64,000 bases of DNA. It comes from Podarcis erhardii. Taxonomy: Eukaryota. The stretch is taken from the NCBI GenBank assembly GCA_964252035.1, contig OZ176200.1. One strand, 5' to 3'. A program made the position numbers and the translations under genes. The notes beneath the pieces were generated by a model. The model did not search any database. It was not told the origin of the DNA and worked only from the letters and a program-made list of their open reading frames with translations. Shown piece after piece: positions 3,564 to 31,830 of the stretch (positions within the stretch are counted from its first letter, which is position 1; each line of letters starts with the position of its first letter).

Positions 3564-4517
3564 ATGTTCCAGGGGAACTGCACTGCAGTGCTGGACTTCA
3601 TGCTGTTGGCTTTTCCCACCCAGCCAGAGTGTCAGATCTTACTTTTCCTGGGCATCAGCGTGATCTATGCAGCCATAATCACAGGTAACATCCTCATTAT
3701 GGTAGCTATCTGGGGCAACCCTCACCTACACACTCCCATGTACTTCTTCCTAGGGAATCTCTCTGTGGTTGAGCTCTGCTACACAGCAGCTGTAGTCCCA
3801 CAGATGCTGCTGACCAGCTTGCAGGAGAGGAAGTCCATCACTTTTAGAAGCTGCTGTGCTCAGATGTTCTTCTTCATTGGACTGGGCAGTGCCGACTGCT
3901 TCTTACTGGCCATCATGGCATACGACCGCTATCTGGCCATTTGCAAACCCTTGTACTATACCCTCATCATGACGCAGCAGCTGTGCATTCAGCTAGTGGC
4001 TGCCTCCCTGCTGATTGGTTTCTTGATTTCATTCATGCTGGTGTGGTTGGTCTTCCACCTCCCCTTCTGTGGCGAGCATGGAATTGAACACTTCTTCTGC
4101 GATGTGCCACCTGTATCACAGCTCACCAGTAACAAGACCAAGCTCGATGAGGTTGGTGTGTTCCTCACTGGGATTACAGCCATTGCTGTACCCTTCATAT
4201 TGATCTGCGCCTCTTACCTTTTCATCGCTGTTACAGTGCTGCGGATCCATTCTGCAGACAGTCGCCGAAAAACCATCTCCACTTGCTCCTCCCACTTAGC
4301 TGTAGTGGCCCTGCAGTACGGTTGCTGCAGCTTCATGTACCTGCGTCCAAGCTCCAGCTTTTCTCCAAAGCAGGACCAGATGCTATCAATGGTGTACACT
4401 CTGGGTACACCGCTACTTAACCCCATCATATACAGCCTGAGGAACAGAGAGATGAAAGTAGCCCTGAGGAAAGTCATCAGACACCAAATCTTCCAAAGGG
4501 AATCTGAATGTCACTAA
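3564..4517 (+). CDS. OR10W1: Olfactory receptor, family 10, OR10W1-like, intact 317 aa
   Basis: Single-exon 7TM with OR motifs GN, LHTPMYFFL, MAYDRYLAIC, STCSSHL and PLLNPIIYSLRN. Shares recalled OR10W1-specific strings IITGNILI, LGSADCFLLA, GIEHFFCDVPPV, AIAVPF, QYGCC, PKQD and VYTLGTPLLNP. Splice acceptor ctgtAG at 3542-3543. Confidence 0.85.
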   Translation: MFQGNCTAVLDFMLLAFPTQPECQILLFLGISVIYAAIITGNILIMVAIWGNPHLHTPMYFFLGNLSVVELCYTAAVVPQMLLTSLQERKSITFRSCCAQMFFFIGLGSADCFLLAIMAYDRYLAICKPLYYTLIMTQQLCIQLVAASLLIGFLISFMLVWLVFHLPFCGEHGIEHFFCDVPPVSQLTSNKTKLDEVGVFLTGITAIAVPFILICASYLFIAVTVLRIHSADSRRKTISTCSSHLAVVALQYGCCSFMYLRPSSSFSPKQDQMLSMVYTLGTPLLNPIIYSLRNREMKVALRKVIRHQIFQRESECH

Positions 4518-5719: not shown

Positions 5720-5860
5720 GGGATAGCTCAGTCAGTGGAGCATGATACTCTTAATCTCAGGGTCGTGGATTTGACCCCCATGTTGGGTGAAAGATTCCTA
5801 CATTTCATGGGGTTGGGCTAGATTATCCTTGTGGTCCCTTCCAACTCTATGATTCTATGA
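5720..5860 (+). mobile_element. tRNA-derived SINE with CR1-like tail
   Basis: ggatagctcagtcagtggagcat head with A/B-box-like motifs. Tail ggtcccttccaactctatgattctatga. Confidence 0.75.
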
Positions 5861-7926: not shown

Positions 7927-8772
7927 TTATTATTTATACCCCGCCCATCTGGCTGAGTTTCCCCAGCCACTCTGGGCGGCTCCCAATCAGTATTAAAAAC
8001 AATACAGCATTACATATTAAAAACATCCCTGAACAGGGCTGCCTTAAGATGTCTTCTGAACGTCAGGTAATTCTTTATCTCTTTGACATCTGATGGGAGG
8101 GCGTTCCACAGGGCGGGCGCCACTACCGAGAAGGCCCTCTGTCTGGTTCCCTGTAGCCTCACTTCTCGCAATGAGGGAACCGCCAGAAGGCCCTCGGCGC
8201 TGGATCTCAGTGTCCGGGCTGAACGATGGGGGTGGAGATGCTCCTTCAGGTATACAGGACCGAGGCCGTTTAGGGCTTTAAAGGTCAGCACCAACACTTT
8301 GAATCGTGCTCGGAAACGTACTGGGAGCCAATGCAGATCTCTCAGAACCGGTGTTATGTGGTCCCGGCGGCCACTCCCAGCCACCAGTCTAGCTGCCGCA
8401 TTCTGGATTAATTGCAGTTTCCGGGTCACCTTCAAAGGTAGCCCCACGTAGAGCACATTGCAGTAGTCCAAGCGTGAGATAACTAGAGCATGCACCACTC
8501 TGGCGAGACAGTCCGCGGGGAGGTAGGGTCTTAGCCTGCGTACCAGGTGGAGCTGGTAGACAGCTGCCCTGGACACAGAGTTAATCTGCGCCTCCATGGA
8601 CAGCTGTGAGTCCAAAATGACTCCCAGGCTGCGCACCTGGTCCTTCAGGGGCACAGTTACCCCATTCAGGACCAGGGAATCCTCCACACCTGCCCGCCTC
8701 CTGTCCCCCAAAAACAGTACTTCTGTCTTGTCAGGATTCAACCTCAATCTGTTAGCCGCCATCCAACCTCCA
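7888..8772 (-). mobile_element. L2-clade LINE, 5'-truncated, with open ORF2 C-terminus and (ATT)n tail
   Basis: ORF 8010-8834: [62 protein letters not shown], typical of the L2/CR1 post-RT region. (AAT)n tail near 7888-7925. Confidence 0.9.
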
Positions 8773-9380
8773 AATGCATAGACTGGGATAGAATGTCCAC
8801 AAAACAGACATATTTTGTTGAAAATAACATACAAGAATGCATTATTTTAGGCCTTGCAAAAATGTGCTTGTTCAGCCAAATTTAATATGAACAGATGTGT
8901 ATTAGGAGAAGGTTGCGCAAAGATGCTGTTGAATTTTCATGAGGACTTTACAAACACATAGGAATAGGGTGGTCAACTGAACTGCATGGTTACATCCAGT
9001 GCCACTTCAATCAAGTCTGAATTGAGAAAACCAGCTGTGAAGGATATATAGTATTCCACTCACTAATATAATGAGCACCAAGGGAAAGCTGGGCCTGGCA
9101 TGAATACAGGAACACCACTACTTACATGCATTCCACTCACGTTCCACTGCATTTATGTGAGTTGCTGCGAAATAAATAAATTGGCCTTACCTCAGGATTG
9201 CTGCCCAAGCAAGGGAAGGCAGCCTTTGATTGACCAGTGACACGGGCCAGGAGGTGCCTTCTCCCTGCCTCCACCACACGTTTGCGCCCCCATCCTGGCA
9301 CCAGTTCTGCTGGGTGCCCTTCTTGGCTTCCGCCCTCTGGGCCCAGCCACCACCACCATGTGCACTGGCTGCCCTCAGGT

Positions 9381-9969: not shown

Positions 9970-11436
9970 CTTACGTCCCTATTAATGTACCTCATTTCTA
10001 TGTCTTGCAATCGGAGCTTGTACCCTCTGTGCTTTGTGTGCTTTCTGTTCTGCCACTTTCTGAGCTCTTCTTGACCTTGGGGAGGGTGGAGGAATGCTTT
10101 CCAGAGACAGTGAATCTGTTAAGCCTCTCTCTTCCAGTGTTTCTTCTCCGAGCTGTTCCCCATCCAGTATTTCCCAGCTTCTGCCTTCTGGACTATGTCC
10201 CTCTGCAAACCACTGTTCCCTGACAGTCTCTCTCTCTATTCCCCATGTGCCCCCAAACCAGTCCATTATTACTATCCTAGTGCTAAAGATATACCCCAAT
10301 GCTAATGACATATTTAAATCAATACATTTTATAATTTGATGGTGTGGTAAGAATTTACTTCTACACCACCTTGTTCTTACCTAGGTGAGGGAATGCCTTT
10401 ATATAAGACACAGAACCAACAGAATAACAACCATCTCAGCATCCTGGAGGAACCTGGTTTACTAGAGCTATTGCAGTAGGACACCCTTGCCAATCAGCTA
10501 CTCAGCTGCTAGTTAGAAGGGCGAGCTGTGATTTCCTTTTCTCCTTTTCAGATCCTGATGGCCATCTGTGATTATTATAAAACACAACCAGGTATAAATA
10601 GCAGCCTTGTACCCGCATTGCTTGGGAATTCTAGGAAAATAAAAAATTAGTGCAGATCTGCCATCTTGATTTTTTTTAAAAAAAGGCACCCAGTTGTATC
10701 CAAGCATAAGCAAAAGCCTGCTCCTTAATCTCATGAACTGTGAAGCAAACTTTTGTTAAAATCACTGCAGTTTTTAAAGGTGTGGTCTGCCATCTTGATT
10801 CAAAATGGCACCCAGTTGTATCCAAACCTGCTCCTTGATCTCAGGAACCATCATGCAAAAGTTGTCTTTGATATCTTAAGAGGTATTCAAATGCAGAGCA
10901 AACAAACAGTTTTCCAAATATATAGTAAATAGAGGAAGTTTGACTCAAAGTTATAATTTGTTTGGGAGGGGGATATATAGATATATAATTAGTTTAATTA
11001 TAGACTTTTCATTGATTATGCTATGCCCCAAAGAGGTAAGTTTGATGTTTTGGAAGAAGTTGCTTTCGTAAAGAAGCACAGAAGAAATACAATATCCTGG
11101 AGACATATATGTACTATATGTCATGACTGTGTTCACTGCACACTTTGAACACAGGAATCAAGGGTAATGTACCAAGAAGGACACACATAGCGCAACAAAG
11201 AAGTTAATTGAATTCACTATCCAGAGACTGGGTATTTCCTCTCTGTGTGCCTTCTTGTGGAAAGCTCAGCTATTATCTTCAAGGAAGGCCAGTGCGCTCA
11301 GCTTTTATGAAGCTTCTCAGTGGACCGATGATCAACAAGTGAGAGAGGATTTGCTCACCTTGTGCAGCACAGACCTGACCTCCATGTGGAACACTTTCTC
11401 CCAGTGCTGATCCTATACACTGCCATCCACTGGAAA

Positions 11437-11660
11437 ATGAATACCATAGGCTTCCTTGCACTTGCTTTTACTGTTCTGCTCTGGGAAGCTTCTTCAGTAA
11501 ACAACAAATGGCTTAAAGGCCACCCCCAGATGTCTGCTGCCATGCCAGATTTCTCAGTTCAAGGAGATGTGGTAATTGGGGTAGTCTCCCCTGCCCATGC
11601 AAGTGTGCACGCCACAATAACACATCTCAAAAGTCTGCCACAAGCAGCTAGCTGCAAGGG
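11437..11660 (+). CDS. V2R-like exon 1 (MNTIGFLALAF...SCKG)
   Basis: Hydrophobic signal peptide, GDVVIG motif, donor GG|gtaagt. Confidence 0.85.
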
Positions 11661-13813
11661 GTAAGTCTCACTTCCAGTACATTCCTTACGATGGAGGAAA
11701 TTAACGGATATAAAGAAGAATTAATGGAAGAAAAACCTGTGGCTGTTACAAAAAGTAAAGGAAACACTGTCTTCTTCTACTGCCAGAAAGACTAAGGCTG
11801 CAATCCAATGCACGCTTGTATGAAAGCAGTTCCCATTGAATTCAGTGGGTCTTACTTCTGAGTAGACATTAATCAGGTTATGCTGTAAGATTACATTTAT
11901 GTCTCAGTCTAAGAATGGGATGGGGAACCTCTTGTTGGACTACAACTCCCATCATCCCTGTCCCTGACGATTGGCTATGCTGACTGGGGTAATGGTATTT
12001 GGAGTCTAACAACATATGAAGGGCCAGAGAGCACTTTAATGCTCTAAGGTGACCTTTGTAGGAGCTATCCCATTTTATCTTCAAAGCAGCTCTGTGAAGG
12101 CTTAGGCTGCGGGGCTCATCCAGACTGCCTTTTGGGTTGCATTGCCATTTGTGGCAGTGTGGGTTTTTCTGGAGAAAGCACAGGGACAGAACAAAGAAAA
12201 ACAATGCTCAGTCATGGAGCTTTAAAGTTTGGACCTGTGCCCAGAAATGCAGCACAAATAAGATGTCTGGATGAGCCTTGTGACTGGCCCAAGTCACGGA
12301 TGAACTGGGAGTAAAATGCAGGCTACTTTGTCAAAGTCCAACACAGTGTGGTGTAGTGGTTAAGAGCAGTAGATTCGTAATCTGGGGAACCAGGTTCACG
12401 CCTCCGCTCCTCCATATAGAGCTGCTGGGTGACCTTGGGCTAGTCACACTTCTCTGAAGTCTCTCAGCCCCACTCACTTCACAGAGTGTTTGTTGTGGGG
12501 GAGGAAGGGAAAGGAGAATGTTAGCTGCTTTGAGACTCCTTTGGGTAGTGATAAAGCAGNNNNNNNNNNNNNNNNNNNNNNNNNNNNNNNNNNNNNNNNN
12601 NNNNNNNNNNNNNNNNNNNNNNNNNNNNNNNNNNNNNNNNNNNNNNNNNNNNNNNNNNNNNNNNNNNNNNNNNNNNNNNNNNNNNNNNNNNNNNNNNNNN
12701 NACCTCTCCACACACGTCATTATGCTGGCTATCATTAACCTTAGATCTCAAATTGAGGTTCTAGAAAGTGACTTTTTGTGCTCCCTTTCTTCAGCTTGGA
12801 CGGGAGTCTCAGAGCAGGAGCATTATAACTGCACACTGCACACATGAGTAAGCTCACCCATGCCTTCTCTCAAACATTTTCTCATTTGAAAGGGAGAAAG
12901 TCACAAGTTTACTAGGATCAAATTCATGCTAGACCTAGAGAAGGAGGTTGCATTGAAGAATAATTATTGTGCTTAAATGACCATTTCTTCTGTGGGGGGC
13001 GGGGTGGATCTTCTGATAAATATCTGCTCAGACAAATACCAACTGTGCTCAAAACTTCCTTTTCAGATTCCGCATTCGGTTTTTCCAGCACACTCTGGCC
13101 ATTCTCTTTGCCCTTTCAGAAGCAAATAAGGACCCTGGCTTAGTACAGAATATCACCCTGGGCCTCCAGCTTTATGACTCATGCATCTCACCAACCAAAG
13201 CACTGAAAGGTGCCCTTTCTTTTTTATCAGGCCCACAAAAACTGGTGCCTAACTTCAGCTCCTGCTCTCGGCCTTTGCTTCTTGGTATCATTGGGGCAAT
13301 GACTTCCCCAGAGTCAGAGCCCATAGCACAAGTGCTTTCCCTCTACAGAGTCCCTCAGGTAAGCAGTGTATCTAGGAAAATCAATTATATATCCTGCTAG
13401 ATGGTCTCAGTTTACAAAAAGTAATCAAATGGATTTAACAGGGTAATTGTAAGAATTGCTGTAGACATATACACATGCACACACATTTGTGTGCTTCCAC
13501 AGCTTTCGTTCTGTCTCTACAGCTGGAATGTGTTAAATTAGCAGGAAGTTTTGTCTGTGTGATAGAGACCTTGGACTTTCTTATCAAAATCTTCTTCCAA
13601 CTTCAAAATGAAATCTCCATCTCTCATTCTAAGAACTGGGAAAGTGTCCTTGCCAACTAATTTCATCATACCCTGGGTGCTAAATATAAGGAACATTTCG
13701 TCAGTACTGTCTATGGCACAGGTGGAGTCTGCTGAGCTGCTCAGGGTGCTCCAACTCTTAATTCCAAGCTCTCTGAACATTTCCACACTCTGGTCAGCAG
13801 AGAGAGAGAGAGA

Positions 13814-13873
<60 letters not shown>

Positions 13874-14590
13874 ACTGGCAACTCACATAGTTGAACAGAG
13901 AATGTAAATAAAGCAACTCAGTGCTGCAGGAATTACCGGATGAATGAAAACAGAAGACAGATTTCAGCTGGCCAGCCTTGGCTTCTGTATTATTGTGCTT
14001 CCTGGTAATGTAGGGAAGCAGATGACAGATTTTTAAGAAGTTTGTTAGGTGTACCATGTTGCAATCTATACACCTGCCTGCCTGTAATGTCAGTCAACAT
14101 AATATTGTTACGTGATGCTGTCCTAGTATAGCTGTTGACATGTTTCATGTGTGCAGCGCAGTTCTATTAATATTTACTCAGAAGGCTCACAGAATTCAAG
14201 GGGAGCTCCTTCCGCAGTAGGTGTGCTTAGGAGTGCAACATAACAGCTTATTCCTTTGACTTATTTCGCTAGCATCTAACATCCCCAACCTATTTTTCCT
14301 CTATCTTCATCAAGTTCCTTCTCCATCTTTGCAATCACTATACAGTATTTATTCTTCCTTTTACATCTCTCCTACTCATCTTCCTTCAATTTTCTTTTTC
14401 ATCCTCTTCATTCTCCTGGAACTTAATAATCTTGTAGAAACCCCATCTTCCCTCAGGCTTTTCCCATACCCATGTATTTTAACATTTTACTAATGTCATT
14501 ACATTCCCTTTGACTTTACATTACATGCAAACACAGATAACAGAGCACAGGCAGGAGGGGGAAAAGTAGTGGGCAGAAAAATGATTAAGA

Positions 14591-14646
<56 letters not shown>

Positions 14647-17600
14647 ACTTTCCTGCTCCAAAACAATTTTCCTAAAGAACGAAAAGAAGAGGGAGAAGGC
14701 TTGGTGGATTCCATTGCATATCTCTCTGTGTGTAATGTGTAGTTCAGCTCTGATATTTGCACTGCTTTCATCTCAACACTTTTTAAAAACTGCTGGGAAG
14801 TTTCCTTTTTCAAATGTGCTACTTTTTCTTCATCTTACTTTCCTTTGGCTCAGTGCCTTATATTCTGTTTTCCCTTTCTCTAACTCTGTAGCCTCTACTT
14901 TTCTCAGCCATTGTGTCTCCTTTGAGCAAGGACAGTGCCCATTTGCTCCATGTGCCATATTTGCCTACTGTAGTCACTTAGCAACACAGGAATCTGCCTT
15001 ATATTGTGTCAGACCATTGGTCCATATAGTTCAGTATTGTCAACAATGACTGGAGTTGCCTGGAATTAAAAGTGGGACCTTCTGCAGGCAAATCAAATGC
15101 TCTACCGCTGAGCTATATGGAAACATTATTCATTTTATTATTGAGAATGATGGTGATGTTCAGCTACTGTGTATCTCCTTTCCTTGTGCATTCTTTAAAA
15201 ATGGTGTTATGAAAAGGATGCTTTATTAAAAATCCATGACAGAATGGCAAGTTATGACAGATAAGTCTGAAGAGAGCAGGCAGTAAGGAATAAGGTACAA
15301 AATACTGAAAGAGAATCCGTGATTCCCTCTTTTATCCCTCAGATCAGCCATGGTTCTCAGGATCCCAAGTTTTCTGACCACTTCCATTTCCCATCATTCC
15401 TTCGCACCGTGCCTTCCAGCAGCCACCAGCCCTCTATGCTCTGCCAGCTTCTGCAGCACTTCAACTGGACATGGGTGGGTGTGGTGAGTTTTGGCAGCGA
15501 TGCTGCTCAGATGGAGACCGTTTTGAAGAAGGAATTGGGCCAGACAGGGGGCTGCCTTGCCCTGTCCAAAACAATCCATGACCCCTATTCCTGGCTGGAG
15601 ATGAGTGCAGCTGCTAGGGACATTGGGAACTCACTAGCAAGTGTTTTCTTGTGCCACTGCTACAACATCCACTTCCAGCTGCTTGCCGGTGCTCTACAAG
15701 CACAAAACGTTACTGGTAAGACGTGGATCTTGACAACGAGCCTTGCTGTGATCCCAGAGATGTTCACCAAGGAGGCGTTACAGCTCCTGAATGGGAGCCT
15801 GGATCTGAGGATTCATTCGGATAAAATCTCAGGTTTCGATCATTTCCTGACCACGCTTAGCCCTGCTGCTTATCCCAACAGCCATTTGGTGAAAGTGCTC
15901 TGGCAAAATCTGTTTGACTGTGTTTGGCCAGGTTTAGAAAAAACTGATGGAAAAAACACACCCCGACTCTGCACTGGGGTAGAGCAGGTGGGTGCCAGCC
16001 ACTTGCTCCTCTTCGATCTAGAGAATTGGGCTGCCACATATCAGGCCTATCTTGCAGCCAGGGCCTTCATCACAGCCTACCACAACATGATCTCCTGCAT
16101 ATGGGACAAAGGACCCTTCACCCATGGAAGGTGTGCCACAACGAAGGATTTCCAGCCATGGCAAGTGAGTCAACTGTTCCTCTCCTTGTCTAGACTCAGT
16201 TGCTGCTTGTGTAGAGTTCAGCAGAACTGGGTTCTAGGTTGGAAGAACTTTAGAAGTCTTGAATGTCCTAAAAGTTACAAGAAAACATTGCTAGCAAGGA
16301 GCAATATTCTTGGCAGAGTCAGGGCCAGAGAGAGGTCATGGGGCAAGAACTCAAACCAATCATGCCTCCCCCACCCACCCTGCCCACTTAGTGGAAATGT
16401 GCAAACACATGCACACTGGGGGCAGCTAAAATACAACCGGAGAGAAAACCAGTCCATCCATCCATTCCACTTGTCTCAGTTAGATATCTTCCTATCCAGT
16501 CTGCACCACTTAATACAGCTCAGGACTGGGATCTTCAATATGGATGAGTACAACATAGATCTTAAGGTGGCTTCAGGTTGGGCCATTTGACTTTTCCATG
16601 TTGCACCAATAAATCTCATATTGAGGGAACAGGAAGCAGAAGGGAGAAATAACTCCAAGGCCACTGGTTCTTACTGAGTGACTTGGGTAAACCAAGCAAC
16701 TTCCAGACGTGTAAAAGTTACATGTGCTTCAATCTGTTTTTAGCCCACTGTTGATTTTAATTAGTTTTGAATGTTTTTAAAATACCTGTTTTTGACTGTC
16801 TTTTATTAATAATTTTATTTCCCCACTTTTATTGTGTAAACTGCTTTGATGCTCTATTACAACCAAGTAGCGTATAACTGTTGTTAAGTAAATAAATGGT
16901 AAGCCACACCTGATTGATACTAGAGTTGTGTGAAAATGGCCTTCTGAAATCCTCCAGCCTGTTTATCAGTTTCTAGAGCTCTCCATATCCCCTGTCCGCC
17001 ACCTGACCTGAGTTGACTTGGGGAACATCCAATCAGGATTCAGCCTCAAATCAGTTAGGGTCTTCAGAAACCTATATGGTAGGAAGCAGGGAGAAGGAAG
17101 GAGATGCTGTGTCTCCTTCTCCTCCTCCGGACCACACTGCAGAAAACAGGAGACTTTAGCTCTTCTGGGTCCTACTTTGCCAATGTAACCTGCAGGGAAT
17201 GTGATGGCAAGGCAGACCCCTTCAGCTAGTAGGATTACACTCTTGGTGGGTGCCTCCTGCAATACCATTGTTCCAAAATGGGTGGCAATATCTTCAGAGG
17301 TGTCCAAACTGGTGATATTTTTATCATCTGGACACATGGTCAACAGACCCTGGACACCTTCCACCAGAAATTCAATGATTTTCACCCCACAATCAACCTA
17401 ACAATGAATCAATCTATGCAAGAAATACATTTTTTGGACACTACTATAAAAATACAGGATGGGCACATAGACACCACCTTATACCATAAACCAACTGACC
17501 GACAAACATATCTACATGCCTCTAGCTACCATCCCAAACATCCCAAACAGTCCATTGTATATAGCCAGGCACTACGTTACAGCCGCATCTGTTCCAATTC

Positions 17601-20600
17601 TACAGACAGAGACTCTCACCTAAGAGATCTACAACAAACCTTTTTAGAACTAAAATACCCAACAGATGAAGTTAGACAACAGATCAACAGAGCCAGACTG
17701 ATACCCAGAGAGAACTTGCTGCAAGACAGACCCAAAAAAGAAAATAACAGAACACCTCTAGTCATCACATACAGCTCCCAAGTTAAAACAGTACAACGCA
17801 TCATCAGAGATCTACAACCTCTCCTGGACAATGACAGTTCTCTTTCTCAAGCTCTGGGAGGAAGACCTTTCATTGCCTACAGACAGCCACCCAGTCTTAA
17901 ACAACTCCTAACCCACAATAATACTACAACCAGACCTAACACGGACACTGGCACCAGAGCCTGCAATAAACCCAGATGCCAACTTTGCTGCCACATACAC
18001 CCGGACAACACCATTACTGGCCCCAACAACATCACACATACCATCTCGGGACTATTTAATTGCTCATCGTCTAACATTGTGTATGCCATAAAATGCCAAC
18101 AGTGTCCTTCAGCTCTCTATATTGGACAAACAGGCCAGACCTTACGCCAAAGAATAAACGGACATAAATCGGACATCAGGAATCACAAGACAGAGAAACC
18201 AGTAGGAGAACATTTCAATCTCCCAGGACATTCTATACAAGATCTCAAAGTAGCTGTTTTACTACAAAGGAATTTCAGAAATAGACTGGAAAGAGAAGCT
18301 GCTGAATTACAACTTATCACCAAACTCAAAACCATGGAAAAACCTGGTCTGAACAAAGACCTTGGATTCTTATCTCATTATACATGACAAAGCCATTTTT
18401 CACCTTTTCACCCCTTGCTTTTTCCTGTAAGACCTATTGCAGTCGTTAAGAGTCGTCAACAGGCTCATCACAGCTATCTGCCAATCACCCATTCCCACCA
18501 CCCTTCTGAGTAATACCCCTCCCCACCTTCTCACTATATAGAAGGGTCTGGAAACTTCTGTTTCAGTGTATCTGAAGAAGTGTGCATGCACACGAAAGCT
18601 CATACCAAGAACTGACTTAGTTGGTCTTTAAGGTGCTACTGGAAGGAATTTGTTTTGTTCAAACTGGTGAAGTTTGAGATGTTTTGGTCCAACGTATTGA
18701 CTCAGCACCTGAATTCCAAATGTAAACCAAAACAGGTGCCTGCATCTTGGGAATAACCATGTCAAATTTGGCAACAATATCTCAAGAGGTGTTCAGATGA
18801 ATAGAAAACAGATGGGCAGAAAGACAAACCACTTTCTAAAATATATAGTAGGATAAAAAACATGTAATGCTTTCCCTGTAGGAAAACACATTTCTGTTGG
18901 TTCCCTGATGCCTGTTCCTGTCAAGACTATTTAATGTTTCGTGTTTTACTATGTTTTTATATGTGCTGTGAGTCTCCCAGAGTGGATGGGGCAGAGTATA
19001 AATAATAAAATTATTATTATTCTCATCATCATCATCATCTGAATTAATCAGGTTATATAAGCAAACACACACACACACACACAATCAGCTTCATAGAGAA
19101 GCAGCCACTTCTTCTCTTTCTCTTGATATTTTAGGTCCATCATTATCTAAAGAATATCAACTTTACCTCTTCATCAGAGGAGATTTTTTTCAAGAATGGC
19201 GAGATACCGGCTACATTTGATATTATGAACTTGCAGATTTTGCCCAATGGCTCTTACAGGGCTGAAAAAGTTGGAGTTCTTCGTTCCAGACCTCAGCTGA
19301 GGAAAGAGCTTCTGATTCATGACAATGCCATTAGGTGGGCAGGGGGCCTTGCTCAGGTAAGTTCCTTACTTGTATTGACCCTCTCCCTATCTCCCTTCTC
19401 TAATGAGGTAACATCAGGCCTAGAAATTTTGGAGCAAACAAAAGCATTTCTGCTTACTAGGCAGACTGTTCTCCCTTCTCCACCCTGCATGTTCTGTTTG
19501 AGGGGGTTCTCTTTGTGGGATGGGTTTTAATGGGCAGGAAAGGGTATGTTAATTGCAATTTATCCCTCCAGGCTCCTACACAGGTTGATCAGAGTTTTAA
19601 AATCCCACCCTTGCCAACAAAAATTTAAAGCTTAGAAATTAGGCTGTAAAACCTTGTTTTGAGCAAGTCCAGCTTCAAAGCAAAGGCATCCCCCTTCTTA
19701 CCCCACATAATAAATAATAAGGCAGCAACTTGGGAAATAAGTTTAAAAATATGATTTACTTACTTTATAATCATGCATTGGTTGACACTTGATAAGGTTT
19801 GATTTATTACTATGTTGATTGACTGAGTGATTGAATCTAATGGCAAAGTGGCTGAGAAGGCTGGAGGCAGGCTGCTTTATATTCCCAAAGAGCAGACCCA
19901 AGTGAAGCCTACAGGCTGAGTTGGGTCTGCCTCCTGTAAATGGCCTTTCCCTGTAGCCTGCCTATGATAGGCCAATTTGTGGGCAGGCTTGAATCCATAG
20001 CTCTAGCCAGTGAGGAAGGCTTGCTGACCTCCCCTGCCAGCCACACACTGATCCATCATCTGATCTTGTCATGTGAGATAGTGTCGGTCCCGCAATGTCA
20101 CTGCACCTGGGGAAGGTAAGCAGTCTTCCATTTCCTTTTTCCTCCTAGGTGCCTCTTTCAATCTGTTCAGAAAGCTGCCTGCCTGGATATAGGAAGCTGC
20201 CTTTGCAGGGGAAGCCACACTGCTGCTACAGCTGTCTGCAGTGCCCCCATGGTCAGTTTGCCAGTGGAACAGGTAAACACCACTTTAAGAGACATTGGGT
20301 TTTCAGTGGCTGAAGATTACCACTGGGCGGGCAGCCTCTCCAGCCACATCCCCACCCCAAGTACCCAAGACAGTAACAAGATGCATCCATTAGAGGTCAC
20401 ACTCTGGACAGCAGTGGTAAAAAGGACCACTTCTTATATATGGGACAATGTCCTATATCTGGCCCAGGCCCAAGAGAAGGCTTCTGATGCAGGGGCAGGA
20501 ACATGTAGCCTTCTAGATATTCTGGATGCCAACCTAACAAACCCAGCCAGTATAGCCAATTATCAGGAATTGTGGAAGTTGTAATCCAACAAAATCTGGA

Positions 20601-22511
20601 GGATCACATGTTCCCTACCCCTTCTTTCAGACTGGCACAGAAGGCATTATTTTGCTCACGGTGCTGCTTTTCCACATCAAAGTCCTACAGTGAAAGGACC
20701 AGCAAAACGGCACATGGTGCAAGTTTGCTTTTGAGGGGGGCTGCTTTCTCCCCACTGGATTTCCACTAAAGCAATGGGTCTTACTGCTTATAACAGATGT
20801 GGGGAACACTCCTGAATTGTTTCCAGCACCAGTTAGCCGGGGAGGCATGCAAGGGGCTCACAGAGATTGTGATTGTGTATGAGTGTGTGAAGCACAGGCT
20901 GTATACACATGAAAGTGTGTGTGCAGGCTGGGGAGGGGGAAGAGGCACACAGGCCCCACCCACAGCTAGATCTACTCCTGCCCATAACTGGCATGCAACC
21001 CTGACCCACTGCCACATGCAGCCAAAAATGTGCCTTATAGGAAATGAAGGCTCCCTCACCAAGTCCTTCTGAGTGGTGGAGGTGGCAAGTAACTAAATTA
21101 CCAATGCGATCACTGTAGCCACTGCATGACTCTATCCCCAATATTATTGTGTGTGATTGCCATGCCCTCAAACAGAGGTGGGAGAACATGTGGCCCTCCA
21201 GATGTTACTGGGCAACAGCTTCCATTCACCTCAGTATGACCAATGATCAGGGATGCTGTGGGTTGTAGCCAATCAGCATCTGCAGGGCCACAGACAATGG
21301 TGGAGGAAGAGGAGTGCAGGGGGAGTGCACAGCCCCCGGCAATGTGCTCCTGGTGGGGTGCCATCGCAGCTGCCCCCCCACCTGTGCTGGGCGCCACACC
21401 CCCACAGGCTGTGTGCTACGCCCCCGGGACGCACGCCAGCCTCGCCCCTTCCTGCTCTTTGCCCCCCAGTGCTCCACCACTGGTCACAGATTCTCCATCC
21501 CCGCCTTTAAAAGAAAACCTGTCTTATTTAATACACCAGAACAGTGAACACCCCTGTTCTGCATGCTCCTCCCTTCTAGACAGTGCCACCTGTTGGGAGT
21601 GCCTTCCAGGACAATGGCCCAGTGAGCAGCAAGACAGATGCATCCCAACCATCGTGGACTTCTTGTCCTACACGGAAACTTTGGGTGTGGTGCTGGCAAC
21701 CTGCAGTTCCTTGTTCTTCTTGCTCTCGCTGTCAGTCTTGGGTATCTTCATACAGCATCACCACACCCCAGTTGTCAAGGCCAACAACCGCAAGCTCAGC
21801 TACCTCCTCTTGACCTCCCTGGCTCTCTGCTTCCTCTGCCCTCTGATGTACCTTGGGCACCCATCCCAGCTCACTTGTTCCTTCCGCCAGGCTGCCTTTG
21901 GCCTGGTCTTTGCCATTTGCCTCTCTGCAACCCTGGCCAAGACGGTGACTGTGGTGATGGCCTTCGGAGCTTCTAAGCCTGGCAGCTGCCTCCAGAAGTG
22001 GGTGGGTTACAAGCTCCCTGGCGCCATCACTCTGGGCTGCTCCCTTGTCCAAGCTGCTGTATGTGTCTGCTGGATAACGGTTTGCCCCCCATTCCCATCA
22101 CAGAACCCACTACATGGGGGGCCTCTCGTGACCCTAGAGTGTGACAAAGGCTCAGTTGAGTTTTTCTACACCATGCTGGGGTACCTGGGCTTTCTAGCCA
22201 CCATTAGCTTAGGGGTGGCCTTCCCAGCCCGCCGGCTGCCAACAGCTTTCAACGAGGCCCAGCACATTGCCATCAGCATGCTGGTCTTCACTTTCGTCTG
22301 GGTCTCCTTTGTGCCCTCCTATCTCAGTGCCACAGGGAAGTACACGGTGGCCGTGGAGATCTTCGCCATCCTGGCTTCTGGAGCTGGTTTGCTGGCTTGC
22401 CTCTTTTTCCCCAAATGCTACATAATTATCTTGCACCCTAAGAAGAATAACAGGGACCACCTTATGGGCAGACAACTTCCACGCAAAGGAGACTTTGCTT
22501 ATGCTCCATGA
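11437..22511 (+). CDS. Vomeronasal type-2 receptor-like (V2R/OlfC) class C GPCR, intact, 6 exons, 871 aa: join(11437-11660,13067-13358,15343-16164,19135-19356,20149-20272,21580-22511)
   Basis: All introns are GT-AG with compatible phases (2,0,0,0,1). Total 2616 nt = 872 codons with no internal stop. Signal peptide; Venus-flytrap motifs NITLG..YDSC, FPSFLRTVP and HFNWTWVG; nine-Cys NCD3G domain; 7TM with V2R hallmarks VKANNRKLSY, LAKTVTVVMAF, FNEA and GKYTVAVEIFAILAS. Confidence 0.93.
12343..12559 (+). mobile_element. MIR-like tRNA/core SINE running into a gap
   Basis: gtgtggtgtagtggttaagagc head, ctgggtgaccttgggctagtcac core. Confidence 0.7.
12560..12701. other. Assembly gap (142 N)
   Basis: Run of N. 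Confidence 1.
13067..13358 (+). CDS. V2R-like exon 2 (292 nt; FRIRFFQH...LYRVPQ)
   Basis: ttttcAG acceptor, CAG|gtaagc donor. Encodes NITLGLQLYDSC and IIGAMTS. Missed by the ORF track. Confidence 0.92.
13800..13869. repeat. (AG)n microsatellite
   Basis: Read directly. Confidence 0.95.
14280..14950 (-). mobile_element. Degenerate L1 ORF1 remnant interrupted by a (TC)n(AC)n microsatellite (about 14597-14648)
   Basis: Minus-strand WEKPEG-like motif near 14450-14470 and K/E-rich composition. Boundaries approximate. Confidence 0.35.
14988..15116 (-). mobile_element. tRNA-derived SINE fragment (related copies near 31410-31560 -, 32317-32497 + and 48690-48790 -)
   Basis: Shared motif gaagctgccttatactgagtcagaccattggtcc and tRNA A-box tagctcagcggtaga. 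Confidence 0.6.
15343..16164 (+). CDS. V2R-like exon 3 (822 nt; ISHGSQDP...DFQPWQ)
   Basis: ccctcAG acceptor, CAA|gtgagt donor. Lies within ORF 15319-16590. Confidence 0.93.
17314..18660 (+). mobile_element. Penelope-like retroelement (Neptune-type, with Cys-rich linker), 5'-truncated, in V2R intron 3
   Basis: ORF 17278-18387 encodes the RT C-terminus (DIFIIW, FLD, LYHKPTD, YHPKH), a C-x4-C-x2-C linker and a GIY-YIG endonuclease (VYAIKC..C...YIGQT, R, E, GLN). Followed by a pLTR-like tail with a TATA-like element and a hammerhead. Confidence 0.92.
18568..18605 (+). ncRNA. Minimal type I hammerhead ribozyme
   Basis: GTAT-CTGAAGA-A-GTGTG(CATG)CACAC-GAAA-GC-TC^-ATAC: intact catalytic core, stem I GTAT/ATAC, stem II and a palindromic AGCT stem-III region. 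Confidence 0.85.
19135..19356 (+). CDS. V2R-like exon 4 (222 nt; VHHYLKNINF...WAGGLAQ)
   Basis: ttttAG acceptor, CAG|gtaagt donor. Confidence 0.92.
19645..20071 (-). mobile_element. Possible solo LTR in V2R intron 4
   Basis: TG...CA candidate ends, minus-strand TATA-like aatataaag and polyA-like signal. No TSD found. Confidence 0.3.
20149..20272 (+). CDS. V2R-like exon 5 (124 nt; VPLSICSESC...CCYSCLQC)
   Basis: cctAG acceptor, G|gtaaac donor. First six Cys of the NCD3G domain. Confidence 0.93.
21295..21482. mobile_element. hAT-like MITE
   Basis: TIRs CA(A/G)TGGTGGAG; 8-bp TSD gccacaga/gtcacaga (7 of 8 match). Confidence 0.7.
21580..22511 (+). CDS. V2R-like exon 6 (end of Cys-rich domain plus 7TM)
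   Basis: ccttctAG acceptor, phase 1 (G|AC = Asp), TGA at 22509-22511. Confidence 0.95.
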
Positions 22512-22799
22512 GCTACAAATGGACAGCATGTACCGGTATATTTAGGAAAAGCGTTTCTGTCCCACTTTTCTGTTTATCTACACCAGGCCTGGGGAGCCAG
22601 AAAGAGCCCCTTGTAAAGAGCACAACACCTAGAAGCACCGATGGTCAGCTGATCTCTGCTTCAGAAGCCCCTGTTGGCCCAGCCCAGCGATCTTTTTACC
22701 TGTCCACACTTGATGTCATGTATGACATCAGCTGTAGAGGCAAGTGAGCATGTCTTGGCAAAAAAAAGGGGGGGGACCTAGTGTTTAGGGAAGCTTTTA

Positions 22800-26781: not shown

Positions 26782-27747
26782 TCAGGTTGTGTTCTTGTCA
26801 CGTGCAAGCTGCTTTGTCCTGGAAATAACCCTGTATAAGGCCCCCTTCACTTCTGCATTCCGTAGGCTATAGATGAGGGGGTTGAGCACAGGGGTGACTA
26901 TTGCATAAAATACTGACACCACCTTGTTGAGGTTGATTGATGAGGCCACCTTAGTACGTACATACATGAAGAAGAGTGTCCCATAGAAGATGGACACCAC
27001 TGTCAGGTGGGCAGTACAGGTGGAAAAGGCACGGCGGCGCCCTCCGACGGAATGAATCTTCAGCACTGTGGAGATAATGCGGACATACGATACTACAATG
27101 ACAACAGAGGAAACCAGGAGCACCATCAGCGAGACCAGGAAGTCAACCATCTCCTTCAGGGAGACATCAGTGCATGAGAGGACGATGAGTGGAGAAGCAT
27201 CACAGAAGAAGTGGTCTATAACATTGGGGCCACAGAAAGTCAACCGGGACATGAAGTAGATGGGCAGTGCTGGGGTGAGGAACCCCACTAGCCACGAGCC
27301 AGCAGCCAGAAGCATGCAAGCATCTCGGCCTACCATCTCCTGGTAACGCAGAGGCACGCAAATAGCCACATAGCGGTCATAGGCCATGGCTGCCAGCAAG
27401 AAGCACTCAGTGCTGCCCAAGAAGGTAAAGAGGTAAAGTTGGGCCAAGCAGGCAGAATAGGAGATAATTCGACCACCAGGAGATCCAAAGCTGGCCAGCA
27501 TCTTGGGCACAGTGAGGGAGGTGTACCACATGTCCAGGCATGAAAGGTGGAGGAGGAAGAAATACATGGGGGTGTGCAAGCGCCTTTCTGTTGCCACCAC
27601 CAGGACCAGGATGGCATTTTCGGTCAGGGTCAGCAAATACATGACCAGGAAGAAGGAAAAAAGAGGCAGGCGCCCCTCATTGATGCCTGTGAAGCCCACC
27701 AAGACAAACTCTTCCACAAGGGTCCAGTTCTCATGTTGAGGCTGCAT
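26782..27747 (-). CDS. OR6Q1: Olfactory receptor OR6Q1-like, intact 321 aa
   Basis: Full OR motifs. Extensive recalled identity to OR6Q1 (MQP..NWT.V.EFV, FTFLG.TECFLLAAMAYDRYVAIC, WLVGFLTP.LPIY, GPNVIDHF.CDASPL, VDFLVSL, YGTLFFMYV.TKV.SSIN.NKVVSVFY). Confidence 0.9.
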   Translation of the reverse strand: MQPQHENWTLVEEFVLVGFTGINEGRLPLFSFFLVMYLLTLTENAILVLVVATERRLHTPMYFFLLHLSCLDMWYTSLTVPKMLASFGSPGGRIISYSACLAQLYLFTFLGSTECFLLAAMAYDRYVAICVPLRYQEMVGRDACMLLAAGSWLVGFLTPALPIYFMSRLTFCGPNVIDHFFCDASPLIVLSCTDVSLKEMVDFLVSLMVLLVSSVVIVVSYVRIISTVLKIHSVGGRRRAFSTCTAHLTVVSIFYGTLFFMYVRTKVASSINLNKVVSVFYAIVTPVLNPLIYSLRNAEVKGALYRVISRTKQLARDKNTT

Positions 27748-29891: not shown

Positions 29892-30863
29892 TCATGACAA
29901 TACAATAAGGGCAGTTCTCTGTGTGCTCTTCAGACATGTGTTCTTTACTCGGCTGAGGACCTTTCCCAAGGCTTTTTTCACATCTTTGTTCCTGAGGGTA
30001 TAGATGATGGGATTCAGCACTGGGGTGATGACAGTATAGAACACAGATACCACTTTTTCCAGTTCAGAAGTCTGACCGGAATGTGGACAGAGGTACATGA
30101 AGATGACAGTGCTGTAGAAGATGGTGACCACCGTGAGATGGCTGGCACATGTGGAAAAGGTCTTGTGCCTTCCAGAAGCAGATGGGAGATCCAAGATGGT
30201 AGAAACAATCAGGGCATAAGAAGTCAAAGTCAGGAGAAAGGACACAAGCACAATCACTGCAGAGACAAGAAAGACCATTGTGTCAGCCATGAAGGTGTCT
30301 CCAGTCGATAAGTTAATTAAGGGGCTCGTGTCACAGAAGAAGTGGTTGATCTGGTTGCTGCCATTGAAGGGGAGCTGGGAGATGAAGGCTATGGGCAAGA
30401 AGGGGGTCAGGAAGCCCCCCAGCCAGCAACTGCAGGCTAGGCAAGCACAGATACAGCTGTTCATGAGCACAGGATACTGCAGTGGCTGGCAGATGGCTAA
30501 GTACCTGTCATAGGCCATAATAGCCAAGAGGAAAAATTCTGTGGTACCAAGTGAGAAGAAGAAATACATCTGGGTGATGCAAGCCTGCAAGGAGATGGCT
30601 TGGGGGCCATTGAGAAAGTCCCCCAGCAGCCGGGGAACTGTGACTGAGGTGTAGCACATCTCTAGGAATGAGAAATTGCTCAGGAAGAAGTACATGGGGA
30701 CATGTAGAGCCACATCCATATTTGAGAGGAGAATGATCAAGGCATTGCCAAGGAGAATGAAGAGGTAGACTACCAAGAAACTGAAGAACAACAGGATCCG
30801 GAACTCCTGGAATCCAGAGAAGCCCAGTAGGATGAATTCAGGGGCTGAGGTGTTGTTCAGCAT
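29892..30863 (-). CDS. Olfactory receptor, family 6/11-like, intact 323 aa (start MLNNTSAPEF)
   Basis: LHVPMYFFL, MAYDRYLAIC, KTFSTCASHL, PVLNPIIYTLRN. The first 55 aa of the ORF-track call are upstream intron (pyrimidine tract, then AG at 30867-30868). Confidence 0.9.
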   Translation of the reverse strand: MLNNTSAPEFILLGFSGFQEFRILLFFSFLVVYLFILLGNALIILLSNMDVALHVPMYFFLSNFSFLEMCYTSVTVPRLLGDFLNGPQAISLQACITQMYFFFSLGTTEFFLLAIMAYDRYLAICQPLQYPVLMNSCICACLACSCWLGGFLTPFLPIAFISQLPFNGSNQINHFFCDTSPLINLSTGDTFMADTMVFLVSAVIVLVSFLLTLTSYALIVSTILDLPSASGRHKTFSTCASHLTVVTIFYSTVIFMYLCPHSGQTSELEKVVSVFYTVITPVLNPIIYTLRNKDVKKALGKVLSRVKNTCLKSTQRTALIVLS

Positions 30864-31830
30864 AGTCTTGGTGTTGCATGTACAGCCAGCATCAAAAACA
30901 GGAGGAGGGAGAGAGAAACAGACAAAGATGTGTTGGTGATAAAGAGATACCAAATGGAAAATCCCAACATTTGCTGTTCTAAGGACATCTGAGTCCACTT
31001 TCATTATCTTTGGTTTGAACAAAGCCATAATTCTGTCTCATGATGATACAAGTAAGTTTCAAGTTTCATTCATAGACATTTACATATACTGAAGTCAACC
31101 CGATTTGGCTTTTTGGTCATTTAGGATGTGTAACGGACATTGTATATTTTTTCCCAGATCACAATTCACCCTATTATTGACGTTTTTCCAAGGATGGGTT
31201 AAGCCTGGTTGTAGTGACTCACAAAGTGGACAAGTGTTGAATCATTCACAAAACCTATTCAACAGCATTTTGAAACCACCGGGATATAGTTATGTGAATC
31301 ACCTTCTGAGATTGGTTCAACAATTCAAAATCTTACTTTGGTGGAACCCAAGTTCCTAATAGGCACAACTCAATCAAGCCTCCATCTCCAACCTCTTAGT
31401 TGGAGTATTAGCATGGTCGCAGTGGAAGTTGCCTTATATTGAGTCAGACCATCTTCCCATCTAGCTCAGTTTTGTCTACACTGACTGGAAGTAGTTCTTC
31501 AGAGTTTCAGGAAGGATTACCAGTATCTTGCAGCCCTACTTGGAGATACTGGGGAAAGAAACTCCTATTGCTCCTTGTCGAACAGAAATTATTCCTTCCC
31601 CAGTCTTGACATTTGATTTCAAGTTGCAAGACTTCACAGAGAGAACTTAATCCCCTGCCCCTCATGTCTTGAAGAATCAAAGCATAAACAAAATATAAAA
31701 AGGTACCATATTCTTTTCCGTGTATATAACATAAACTACATTGATAAAAGTATGAGACAAAACAAAACAATATTAATCAGAAAACTAAAAAGAAGATGGA
31801 ACACCAGTTGAAAATCCATTGCAACTGCTC

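What the first reader, a model, noticed from the sequence alone, without database searches (positions are those of the whole stretch)
11437..22511. Solitary intact V2R-type receptor embedded inside an olfactory-receptor block next to CTNND1
Seen: a complete 871-aa six-exon class C GPCR with V2R 7TM hallmarks, flanked on both sides by ORs, with no V2R paralog or pseudogene fragment recognised in the window. Established: V2Rs usually form their own tandem clusters, and the recalled human OR6Q1-OR10W1 interval contains only ORs. Inference: this is either an old single-copy V2R lineage lost in mammals or a squamate translocation into an OR locus. It could then fall under OR-type enhancers and be expressed in main olfactory rather than vomeronasal neurons.
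Basis: partly seen in the sequence, partly recalled or inferred. Interest (0 to 1): 0.75.

Follow-up and report, generated by a model that had tools for sequence, protein, structure and literature searches.

The report
Ancient lone V2R inside an OR cluster
This lizard window holds one intact vomeronasal-type (V2R, class C) receptor gene between ordinary smell-receptor genes; it belongs to an old, selectively constrained lineage that marsupials and some placental mammals also keep at the same kind of address, so it is neither a lizard oddity nor lost in mammals.

Summary
A six-exon, 871-codon open frame (11437-22511, + strand) has GT-AG at every intron and encodes ANF_receptor + NCD3G + 7tm_3. 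The N gap lies in intron 1 and hides no coding sequence. Olfactory receptor (OR) genes flank it on both sides, CTNND1 follows, and the window holds no other V2R fragment.

- It is an old, essentially single-copy lineage. In an ML tree it forms a 100/100 clade with gecko, agamid and lacertid orthologues plus marsupial (Monodelphis Vmn2r615/616) and placental genes (Tupaia, Cavia, Otolemur, Loxodonta). This clade lies far from the expanded squamate V2Rs.
- It is not lost in mammals, and it is not a squamate translocation. The mammalian orthologues sit 5-7 kb from ORs that are 60-69% identical to the two ORs flanking the lizard gene.
- It is not V2R2/family C. ancV2R is unlikely (different locus, no fish relatives) but could not be placed in the tree.
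- dN/dS is 0.17-0.34. The ligand pocket has lost the amino-acid signature but is conserved across the clade.

[quoted passage not shown] Related lizard genomes already annotate it automatically as "calcium-sensing receptor-like". I found no paper describing the lineage or its OR address.

The parts
11437..11660 (+). V2R exon 1 (start codon, signal peptide, start of the Venus-flytrap domain); ends in phase 2
   Evidence: donor GT; Pogona and Tupaia loci carry a matching exon 1
12560..12701 (.). assembly gap (N) inside intron 1; not coding, not filled
   Evidence: the exon 1/2 junction aligns gaplessly to full-length orthologues
13067..13358 (+). V2R exon 2 (Venus-flytrap lobe 1)
   Evidence: Pfam ANF_receptor 4.8e-13; aligns to CaSR residues 65-164
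15343..16164 (+). V2R exon 3 (main part of the Venus-flytrap ligand-binding domain)
   Evidence: Pfam ANF_receptor 4.6e-21; CaSR alignment
19135..19356 (+). V2R exon 4 (end of the Venus-flytrap domain)
   Evidence: matched in all orthologous loci
20149..20272 (+). V2R exon 5 (cysteine-rich domain)
   Evidence: Pfam NCD3G 1.4e-14
21580..22511 (+). V2R exon 6 (end of the cysteine-rich domain, seven-transmembrane domain, short tail, stop codon)
   Evidence: Pfam 7tm_3 2.7e-75, full profile; 241 bits to the CaSR 7TM
10880..11436 (+). about 550 bp upstream of the ATG, conserved with Pogona (block 10920-10959 is 92% identical): candidate promoter or 5'UTR
   Evidence: function is inferred only
17278..18387 (+). 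retroelement ORF with a GIY-YIG endonuclease domain (Penelope-like) inside intron 3; not part of the receptor
   Evidence: a related element lies in the gecko intron in the other orientation
3564..4517 (+). upstream flanking OR gene (317 aa); 60-61% identical to the OR beside the marsupial orthologues
26782..27747 (-). downstream flanking OR gene (321 aa); 69% identical to the OR beside the Tupaia orthologue, same relative strand
29892..31028 (-). second downstream OR gene; 76% identical to the OR 2.6 kb downstream of the Pogona orthologue
53122..53745 (-). ORF containing a CTNND1 (p120 catenin) armadillo-repeat exon
   Evidence: 332.7 bits to catenin delta-1, PDB 3l6x; Arm repeats
63307..63843 (-). 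ORF read as a CTNND1 N-terminal exon (by eye only; no Pfam match)

Best explanation
The gene is an intact, selectively constrained member of an ancient amniote-wide V2R orthogroup of the 'tetrapod-type' (t-V2R, V2RC sensu Policarpo 2024). It is single-copy in squamates and placentals and duplicated once in marsupials. The lineage has lived inside the CTNND1-adjacent OR cluster since before mammals and sauropsids split, so it is neither a translocated squamate V2R nor a lineage lost in mammals.

Its domain plan is shown: signal peptide, Venus-flytrap domain, cysteine-rich domain, 7TM. From that, it most likely works as a dimeric class C chemoreceptor in which ligand closure of the flytrap is passed through the cysteine-rich domain to the 7TM and a G protein (inferred). 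One of the two CaSR inter-subunit cysteines is kept. The pocket has lost the alpha-amino-acid signature (1 of 5 residues kept) but is itself conserved from lizard to marsupial. This argues for a conserved ligand that is not an amino acid (inferred).

The tissue of expression (VNO or MOE) and any dependence on OR-cluster enhancers are unknown.
For: Structure and integrity.

Orthologues, by exon 6:
- 99% Podarcis and Lacerta, 97% Zootoca, 78% Eublepharis, 76% Pogona.
- 58-63% marsupials and Tupaia.
- Ordinary squamate V2Rs only about 50-56%.

Full-length searches: after the squamates, the best hits are marsupials, Tupaia, Cavia, Otolemur and Loxodonta. Full-length identity of the model to the mammalian genes is 46-53% (50-53% except Loxodonta), against 33-44% to any other V2R.

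Exhaustive HMMER search with exon 3: only two close 50%-identity clusters, the lizard one (98%) and the mammalian one (48%). Among hits matching the full exon the next are at most 39-40%, and those I looked up are salamander and lungfish proteins. A 192-aa unnamed fragment reaches 44% over 156 residues.

ML tree, 82 rows, LG+G4:
- Amniote clade 100/100 (UFBoot/SH-aLRT), with the squamate, placental and marsupial subclades each at 100.
- A caecilian clade is sister (100/98).
- The expanded squamate and turtle V2Rs form a separate clade (SH-aLRT 100).

Microsynteny:
- Tupaia: an OR 5.9 kb downstream on the opposite strand, 69% identical to window OR 26782-27747.
- Monodelphis 616, Vombatus and Sminthopsis: an OR 4.6-6.8 kb downstream. 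The Monodelphis and Sminthopsis ORs are 61% and 60% identical to window OR 3564-4517. The Vombatus OR was compared only with window OR 26782-27747 (41%).
- Pogona: an OR 2.6 kb downstream, 76% identical to window OR 29892-31028.

Selection, dN/dS against gecko and agamid: 0.17 for the 7TM exon, 0.22-0.24 for exon 3, 0.23-0.34 for exon 2.

Pocket: CaSR positions S147/S170/D190/Y218/E297 read S/Q/S/A/T in the model. S-G-Q-x-x-T is shared across the clade (one Loxodonta row differs at the first position).
Against: - No expression data exist for this gene in any species I could reach, so every functional statement beyond the domain plan is inference.
The clade's name in published schemes (one of V2RC1-14?) is therefore not fixed.
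- Absence from snakes, Anolis, turtles, crocodilians, birds and mouse rests on annotated proteins only, not on genome searches.
- OR orthology rests on pairwise identity, not on an OR tree.
- CTNND1 adjacency was shown only in the window, not in the mammalian loci (flanks are limited to 10 kb).
- The site-heterogeneous mixture model did not finish, so the tree uses LG+G4.
Confidence: 0.85

Rival explanations
1. It is an ordinary VNO-expressed V2R. Its place among ORs is a passive relic of conserved synteny with no regulatory meaning. It is chosen and expressed like other V2Rs in Go-type vomeronasal neurons, perhaps together with the family C co-receptor.
For: It is a t-V2R by phylogeny. Squamate V2Rs studied so far are VNO-expressed (Brykczynska 2013, PMC3590772). 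blastn found no non-coding element shared between the lizard and mammalian loci. This does not conflict with the best explanation on identity; it differs only on where and how the gene is expressed.
Against: Nothing direct. OR adjacency kept for the whole of amniote history, strict copy-number control and a conserved pocket are unusual for t-V2Rs, which normally expand per lineage. In amphibians a subset of V2Rs is expressed in the MOE (stated in Policarpo 2024, PMC10869828).
Confidence: 0.5
2. One reading: the gene has come under OR-cluster control (OR-type enhancers, singular choice) and is expressed in main olfactory rather than vomeronasal neurons.
For: The gene has been embedded between OR genes within 4-7 kb on both sides since before the amniote radiation. 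A conserved upstream block is shared with Pogona.
Against: There is no expression evidence at all. I saw no EBF-type site by eye in the conserved upstream block (I did not run a motif scan). Proximity alone does not show shared regulation.
Confidence: 0.15
3. It is the squamate V2R2/family C gene: the broadly co-expressed co-receptor that is single-copy in anole and corn snake.
For: It is single-copy and conserved. Brykczynska 2013 reports one family C gene per squamate. Orthologues carry 'calcium-sensing receptor-like' names.
Against: In the tree it is nested deep among amphibian t-V2R clades, far from the basal group of teleost 'CaSR-like' and Ambystoma 'V2R1-like' proteins. Those basal proteins keep the S-T-D-Y-E/D amino-acid signature, while this clade has S-Q-x-x-T. 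V2R2 lies beside PLCH1 (Zhang 2022; mouse family C on chromosome 3), whereas this gene lies beside CTNND1 and ORs. The Cavia orthologue as query found no mouse or rat protein.
Confidence: 0.03
4. It is the amniote orthologue of ancV2R. Zhang 2022 could have missed it because anole and mouse, their only amniotes, both lack it.
For: Like ancV2R it is conserved and single-copy. Neither anole nor mouse appears among its orthologues.
Against: ancV2R sits in tandem with V2R2 beside PLCH1 and has shark and ray-finned-fish orthologues. No cartilaginous or ray-finned fish protein came near this clade in any search. Its sisters are multi-copy caecilian genes that lie in a tandem V2R array.
Confidence: 0.05
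5. It is a squamate-specific translocation, or a recent duplicate from an expanded V2R cluster, dropped into the OR block.
For: None beyond the unusual location.
Against: Gecko and agamid orthologues exist at 76-78% (exon 6), and the agamid one has the same OR neighbour. Mammalian orthologues have orthologous OR neighbours. The gene is separated from the expanded squamate V2Rs by fully supported branches.
Confidence: 0.01

Closest known systems
Monodelphis domestica Vmn2r615 / Vmn2r616, and the 'extracellular calcium-sensing receptor-like' genes of other marsupials, Tupaia, Cavia, Otolemur and Loxodonta
   Same: Same orthogroup (100/100 clade). Exons 2-6 were recovered in every locus checked. 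The clade shares the S-G-Q-x-x-T pocket positions (one Loxodonta row differs at the first). An OR neighbour lies within about 7 kb.
   Different: 46-53% identity to the lizard protein. Marsupials have two copies. Several placental copies are flagged LOW QUALITY, which suggests decay. None of these genes has a described function or expression pattern that I could find.
Tetrapod-type V2Rs of the expanded squamate and mammalian families (A, B, D, E; V2RC14 of Policarpo 2024)
   Same: Class C architecture, six-exon plan, loss of the amino-acid-binding signature, and membership of the t-V2R radiation.
   Different: Those families expand per lineage in tandem V2R arrays. This gene stays at one copy, sits among ORs and lies on a separate, fully supported branch. 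Mouse family sequences were not in my tree.
V2R2 / family C (mouse Vmn2r1-7, fish OlfCc1)
   Same: Conserved and low-copy across a wide span of vertebrates.
   Different: Basal position in the V2R tree, retained amino-acid signature, PLCH1-linked locus, broad co-expression. The first three were tested here and not met; co-expression could not be tested.
ancV2R (Zhang et al. 2022, PMC9018814)
   Same: A single conserved orthologue per species; sparse receptor-like role proposed.
   Different: Reported from sharks to amphibians and absent in reptiles and mammals. It is linked to V2R2 and PLCH1. This gene is amniote-wide and OR/CTNND1-linked.
Calcium-sensing receptor (CaSR)
   Same: Best solved-structure relative (241 bits on the 7TM, 97 bits on exon 3). 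One of the two inter-subunit cysteines (CaSR C131) is kept.
   Different: This protein has no long C-terminal tail (871 aa, stopping about 30 residues beyond the Pfam 7tm_3 match). Four of the five pocket residues are changed. The automated name 'CaSR-like' given to the orthologues is misleading.

Membership tests
Class C GPCR, V2R/OlfC type | Domain order ANF_receptor (Venus flytrap) - NCD3G (cysteine-rich) - 7tm_3 | tested here: met
   Pfam exon by exon, (7tm_3 at 253.7 bits, full profile)
Class C GPCR, V2R/OlfC type | Six coding exons with a long exon 3 (about 820 bp), a 124-bp exon 5 and a long last exon carrying the whole 7TM | tested here: met
   exon lengths 224/292/822/222/124/932. Matches to exons 2-6 were recovered in six orthologous loci.
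Class C GPCR, V2R/OlfC type | Closer to V2Rs than to CaSR, mGluR or T1R | tested here: met
   Exon 6 is 50-63% identical to V2Rs outside its closest squamate orthologues. Against solved structures, CaSR scores 241 bits, mGluRs no more than 144 and T1R2 about 100.
Amniote single-copy V2R orthogroup (this clade; no published name found) | Monophyly of the squamate and mammalian members, with an internal topology that follows the species tree | tested here: met
   100/100. Squamates, placentals and marsupials each at 100. One weakly supported deviation (gecko + agamid).
Amniote single-copy V2R orthogroup (this clade; no published name found) | Conserved OR neighbours | tested here: met
Amniote single-copy V2R orthogroup (this clade; no published name found) | Adjacency to CTNND1 in other species | not tested
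   Fetched flanks are limited to 10 kb. In the window, the nearest CTNND1 exon I verified is about 30 kb from the V2R.
V2R2 / family C | Groups with V2R2/OlfCc1 at the base of the V2R tree | tested here: not met
   Proxy sequences only (teleost 'CaSR-like', Ambystoma 'V2R1-like'); mouse Vmn2r1 was not available.
V2R2 / family C | Keeps the amino-acid-binding signature of the flytrap pocket | tested here: not met
   S/Q/S/A/T against S/T/D/Y/E in the basal group
V2R2 / family C | Locus beside PLCH1 | tested here: not met
   The window shows ORs and CTNND1. The PLCH1 linkage comes from Zhang 2022 and mouse chromosome 3.
V2R2 / family C | Broad co-expression with other V2Rs | not testable with these tools
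   No RNA run holds the gene
ancV2R | Orthologues in cartilaginous and basal ray-finned fishes; tandem with V2R2 | tested here: not met
   No such fish protein appeared near the clade. The locus differs. Bona fide ancV2R sequences were not in the tree.
Lineage-specific expanded squamate V2Rs | Nests among squamate-only paralogues in tandem V2R arrays | tested here: not met
   Separate clade. No V2R fragment elsewhere in the window.
CaSR (the name automated annotation gives to the orthologues) | CaSR pocket residues and long C-terminal tail | tested here: not met

The most novel reading that the evidence does not exclude
This is a third conserved, copy-number-controlled V2R lineage, beside V2R2 and ancV2R, that has been tied to one OR cluster for the whole of amniote history. 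It would be tied there because it is chosen and expressed through OR-cluster regulation in main olfactory neurons, where it detects a conserved ligand that is not an amino acid. That would make it a class C receptor working inside the OR system.
Probability: 0.12. Interest if true: 0.8.

Novelty: new member of a known kind. Interest (0 to 1): 0.5.

Why it matters
Tetrapod-type V2Rs are the textbook case of fast, lineage-specific birth and death in tandem arrays. The current scheme (Zhang 2022) gives reptiles and mammals only V2R2 plus expanded t-V2Rs. Here a t-V2R has instead stayed at about one copy, under purifying selection, with a conserved pocket, between the same OR lineages in lizards, marsupials and a tree shrew. 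It is missing from the standard models (mouse, anole, and apparently snakes), which may be why it has gone unremarked.

This gives two directly testable questions:
- Does living in an OR cluster put a class C receptor under OR-type gene choice?
- What conserved cue does it detect?

It also corrects the misleading automated name 'calcium-sensing receptor-like'.

Tried and rejected
**Expression.** The one run search found no RNA holder. Laying four 'RNA?' runs on 19100-22900 placed contigs only on repeats (22800-22900 and small intronic pieces), with none on exons 4-6. This says nothing either way about expression.

**Tree model.** The LG+C20 mixture tree did not finish in two 300-s calls. I used LG+G4 with UFBoot and SH-aLRT, and FastTree on all 229 rows.

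**Synteny limits.** Synteny by called neighbours failed for Monodelphis Vmn2r615 and Eublepharis, whose 10-kb flanks hold only repeats.

**Shared non-coding elements.** blastn between the lizard and mammalian loci found exons only.

**Hammerhead ribozyme.** Rfam gave no match for the hammerhead that another reader noted in intron 3, either at gathering score or at E <= 1.

**Literature.** No paper held 'Vmn2r615' or 'Vmn2r616', and I found none describing a V2R in the CTNND1-adjacent OR cluster. Young & Trask 2007 is not held. The Policarpo supplement names V2RC1-14 but not which clade this is.

**Rejected readings.** V2R2/family C and squamate translocation are rejected, and ancV2R is judged unlikely (see rivals). 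Family D is unlikely: it has a mouse member (Vmn2r56), while the Cavia orthologue found no mouse protein.

Full report
**1. What is there**

Translating the region shows six open pieces in the order expected of a V2R. With exact splice sites the model has these exons on the + strand: 11437-11660, 13067-13358, 15343-16164, 19135-19356, 20149-20272 and 21580-22511. Every intron is GT-AG and the phases fit. The CDS is 2616 nt (871 aa) with one terminal stop.

Searched exon by exon by reference, Pfam gives:
- ANF_receptor on exons 2 and 3;
- NCD3G on exon 5;
- a full-length 7tm_3 match on exon 6 (253.7 bits, profile positions 1-251 of 251).

The best solved relative is the calcium-sensing receptor (CaSR), with 241 bits on the 7TM and 97 bits on exon 3.

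**2. The assembly gap**

The N run 12560-12701 lies in intron 1, 899 bases after exon 1 and 365 before exon 2. The split glycine codon at the exon 1/2 junction closes correctly. The junction aligns without any gap to full-length orthologues (Sminthopsis 867 aa, an 862-aa UniParc entry, Cavia). Pogona has the same two exons, with an intron of about 1.1 kb. The gap therefore hides no coding sequence. I did not fill it.

**3. Surroundings**

OR genes (7tm_4) lie at 3564-4517 (+), 26782-27747 (-) and 29892-31028 (-). CTNND1 exons lie on the minus strand: 53122-53745 gives 332.7 bits to catenin delta-1. tblastn of the model against the whole window finds only its own six exons. Intron 3 carries a Penelope-like retroelement ORF with a GIY-YIG domain.

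**4. Who its relatives are**

Word search with exon 6 (only 232-738-aa proteins could be seen):
- Podarcis raffonei and Lacerta agilis 99%, Zootoca 97%;
- Eublepharis 78%, Pogona 76%;
- marsupials 61-63%, Tupaia 58%;
- ordinary squamate V2Rs about 50-56%.

A full-length search with the Lacerta orthologue puts Pogona and Eublepharis at 68-69%. Next come only mammals at about 46-54%: ten marsupials including Monodelphis Vmn2r615 and Vmn2r616, then Tupaia, Cavia, Otolemur and Loxodonta, plus 'LOW QUALITY' Erethizon, Hipposideros and Trichechus. Amphibian and lungfish proteins follow at 40-46%.

The Cavia protein as query recovers the same mammals plus Dugong. It finds no mouse or rat protein.

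The exhaustive HMMER search with exon 3 finds only two close 50%-identity clusters: the lizard one (98%) and the mammalian one (48%). Among hits matching the full exon the next are at most 39-40%, and those I looked up are salamander and lungfish proteins. One 192-aa unnamed fragment reaches 44% over 156 residues.

**5. Tree**

FastTree on all 229 rows gives a 26-tip amniote clade with support 1.0, far from the 58 ordinary squamate V2Rs. An IQ-TREE run (82 rows, 862 columns, LG+G4, rooted on a teleost 'CaSR-like' group) gives, as UFBoot/SH-aLRT:
- amniote clade 100/100;
- squamates 100/100;
- placentals and marsupials each with SH-aLRT 100, and one marsupial duplication into a 615-type and a 616-type group;
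- a caecilian clade as sister at 100/98.

The expanded squamate and turtle V2Rs form a separate clade with SH-aLRT 100. Full-length identity of the model is 46-53% to the mammalian members (50-53% except Loxodonta) and 33-44% to everything else. The mixture model did not finish.

**6. Address**

The lizard arrangement is OR(+) - V2R(+) - OR(-) - OR(-) ... CTNND1(-). The orthologous loci compare as follows.

| Species | OR neighbour of the V2R | Best match among the window ORs |
|---|---|---|
| Pogona | 2.6 kb downstream, opposite strand | 76% to 29892-31028 |
| Tupaia | 5.9 kb downstream, opposite strand | 69% to 26782-27747 (the directly adjacent one) |
| Monodelphis Vmn2r616 | 6.6 kb downstream | 61% to 3564-4517 |
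| Sminthopsis | 4.6 kb downstream | 60% to 3564-4517 |
| Vombatus | 6.8 kb downstream | compared only with 26782-27747 (41%) |

Sminthopsis also has an OR-like ORF upstream of the V2R. The caecilian sister gene, by contrast, lies in a tandem V2R array. Both ORs that flank the lizard gene therefore have orthologues next to the mammalian gene. The V2R was already in this OR block in the amniote ancestor. That excludes a squamate translocation. Together with section 4, it also excludes 'lost in mammals'.

**7. Constraint and pocket**

All orthologous loci carry exons 2-6, and Pogona and Tupaia also show exon 1. The shorter NCBI models (613-719 aa) are therefore N-terminally truncated predictions.

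Nei-Gojobori dN/dS against gecko and agamid is 0.17 for exon 6, 0.22-0.24 for exon 3 and 0.23-0.34 for exon 2. This is purifying selection across the whole protein.

The positions equivalent to 147, 168, 170 and 297 read S-G-Q-T from lizard to marsupials and placentals, except W at the first in one Loxodonta row. The basal teleost and Ambystoma 'V2R1-like' proteins keep S-T-D-Y-E/D. One of the two CaSR inter-subunit cysteines (C131) is kept.

**8. What it is not**

- V2R2/family C: the tree position, pocket and locus are all wrong. V2R2 and ancV2R lie beside PLCH1 (Zhang 2022, PMC9018814), and mouse family C is on chromosome 3.
- ancV2R: no fish orthologues turned up, the locus differs and the sisters are multi-copy. 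Zhang 2022 sampled only anole and mouse among amniotes, and both seem to lack this gene, so a direct tree test is still needed.
- Family D or E: mouse has members of both (Vmn2r56 and Vmn2r18), yet no mouse protein joins this clade. This is an inference, not a tree test.
- Policarpo 2024 splits the t-V2Rs into V2RC1-14 and places the lepidosaur and mammalian expansions in V2RC14. This clade is probably another numbered subclade, but I could not determine which.

**9. How it most likely works**

Shown: the domain plan, intactness, constraint, the pocket pattern, and the age and address of the lineage.

Inferred: a disulfide-linked class C dimer in which flytrap closure on a ligand that is not an amino acid drives the 7TM and a G protein. 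Whether it pairs with the family C receptor, and whether it is expressed in the VNO or the MOE, is open. No RNA run holds it, and the 'RNA?' runs I laid touch only repeats. About 550 bp upstream of the ATG is conserved with Pogona, including a 40-bp block at 92%. That is a candidate promoter. I saw no EBF-type site in it by eye and did not run a motif scan.

**10. Novelty and verdict**

Related lizard genomes already carry automated models of this gene, named 'calcium-sensing receptor-like' or 'V2R 26-like'. Monodelphis has named copies. Large catalogues probably include it. I found no paper describing the lineage, its amniote-wide orthology or its OR address.

It is a new member (a new conserved lineage) of a known kind. 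Interest is moderate. It departs from the usual birth-and-death behaviour of t-V2Rs, and it offers a clean test of whether an OR-cluster address imposes OR-type regulation on a class C receptor.

The joined 871-aa model was never sent to a search tool; all searches used single exons by reference. I joined exons only inside scripts, from the window file. I used no human sequence and did not fill the N gap.

Noticed in passing
window 17278-18387 (+), intron 3 of the V2R: A 369-aa ORF with a GIY-YIG endonuclease domain (Penelope-like retroelement). A related element (73% nucleotide identity) lies in the gecko orthologue's locus in the opposite orientation. The hammerhead that another reader noted at 18568-18605 got no Rfam match, either at gathering score or at E <= 1.
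   Followed up: partly
window 10880-11436 and 6883-7165: Two non-coding blocks are conserved with the Pogona locus. One is about 550 bp directly upstream of the ATG, with a 40-bp core (10920-10959) at 92% identity. The other is a 283-bp block at 71% identity about 4.3 kb upstream. They may be promoter or enhancer elements of the V2R.
   Followed up: partly
L003 (Pogona) 5856-6000, minus strand: An inverted partial copy of V2R exon 2 (54% identity over 48 aa, 74% nucleotide identity) lies about 1 kb upstream of exon 1 of the Pogona orthologue. It looks like a small local duplication relic. The lacertid window has nothing like it.
   Followed up: no
L001 and L005 (Monodelphis, CM051228.1, 19.30-19.33 and 19.51-19.54 Mb): The two marsupial paralogues (Vmn2r616 and Vmn2r615) lie about 200 kb apart in opposite orientation on one chromosome. 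The duplication predates the marsupial radiation (both groups have SH-aLRT of 97 or more). dN/dS between the two copies is about 0.22.
   Followed up: partly
proteins P0001-P0005, P0011-P0014, P0018 (NCBI models of the orthologues): Public gene models of this orthogroup are mostly N-terminally truncated (613-719 aa) because exons 1-2 were missed. Those exons are present in the loci just upstream of the annotated starts. The 'calcium-sensing receptor-like' names are misleading.
   Followed up: yes
window 8010-8834 (-), 28281-28970 (+): Retroelement ORFs lie between the genes. The ORF at 28281-28970 has a reverse-transcriptase domain (RVT_1). The one at 8010-8834 has no Pfam match and looks like a LINE C-terminal part.
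   Followed up: no
window 13820-13880 and 14590-14660, intron 2: (GA)n and (CA)n/(GA)n microsatellites, seen as runs of repeated RE/SL and VC residues in the ORF translations.
   Followed up: no
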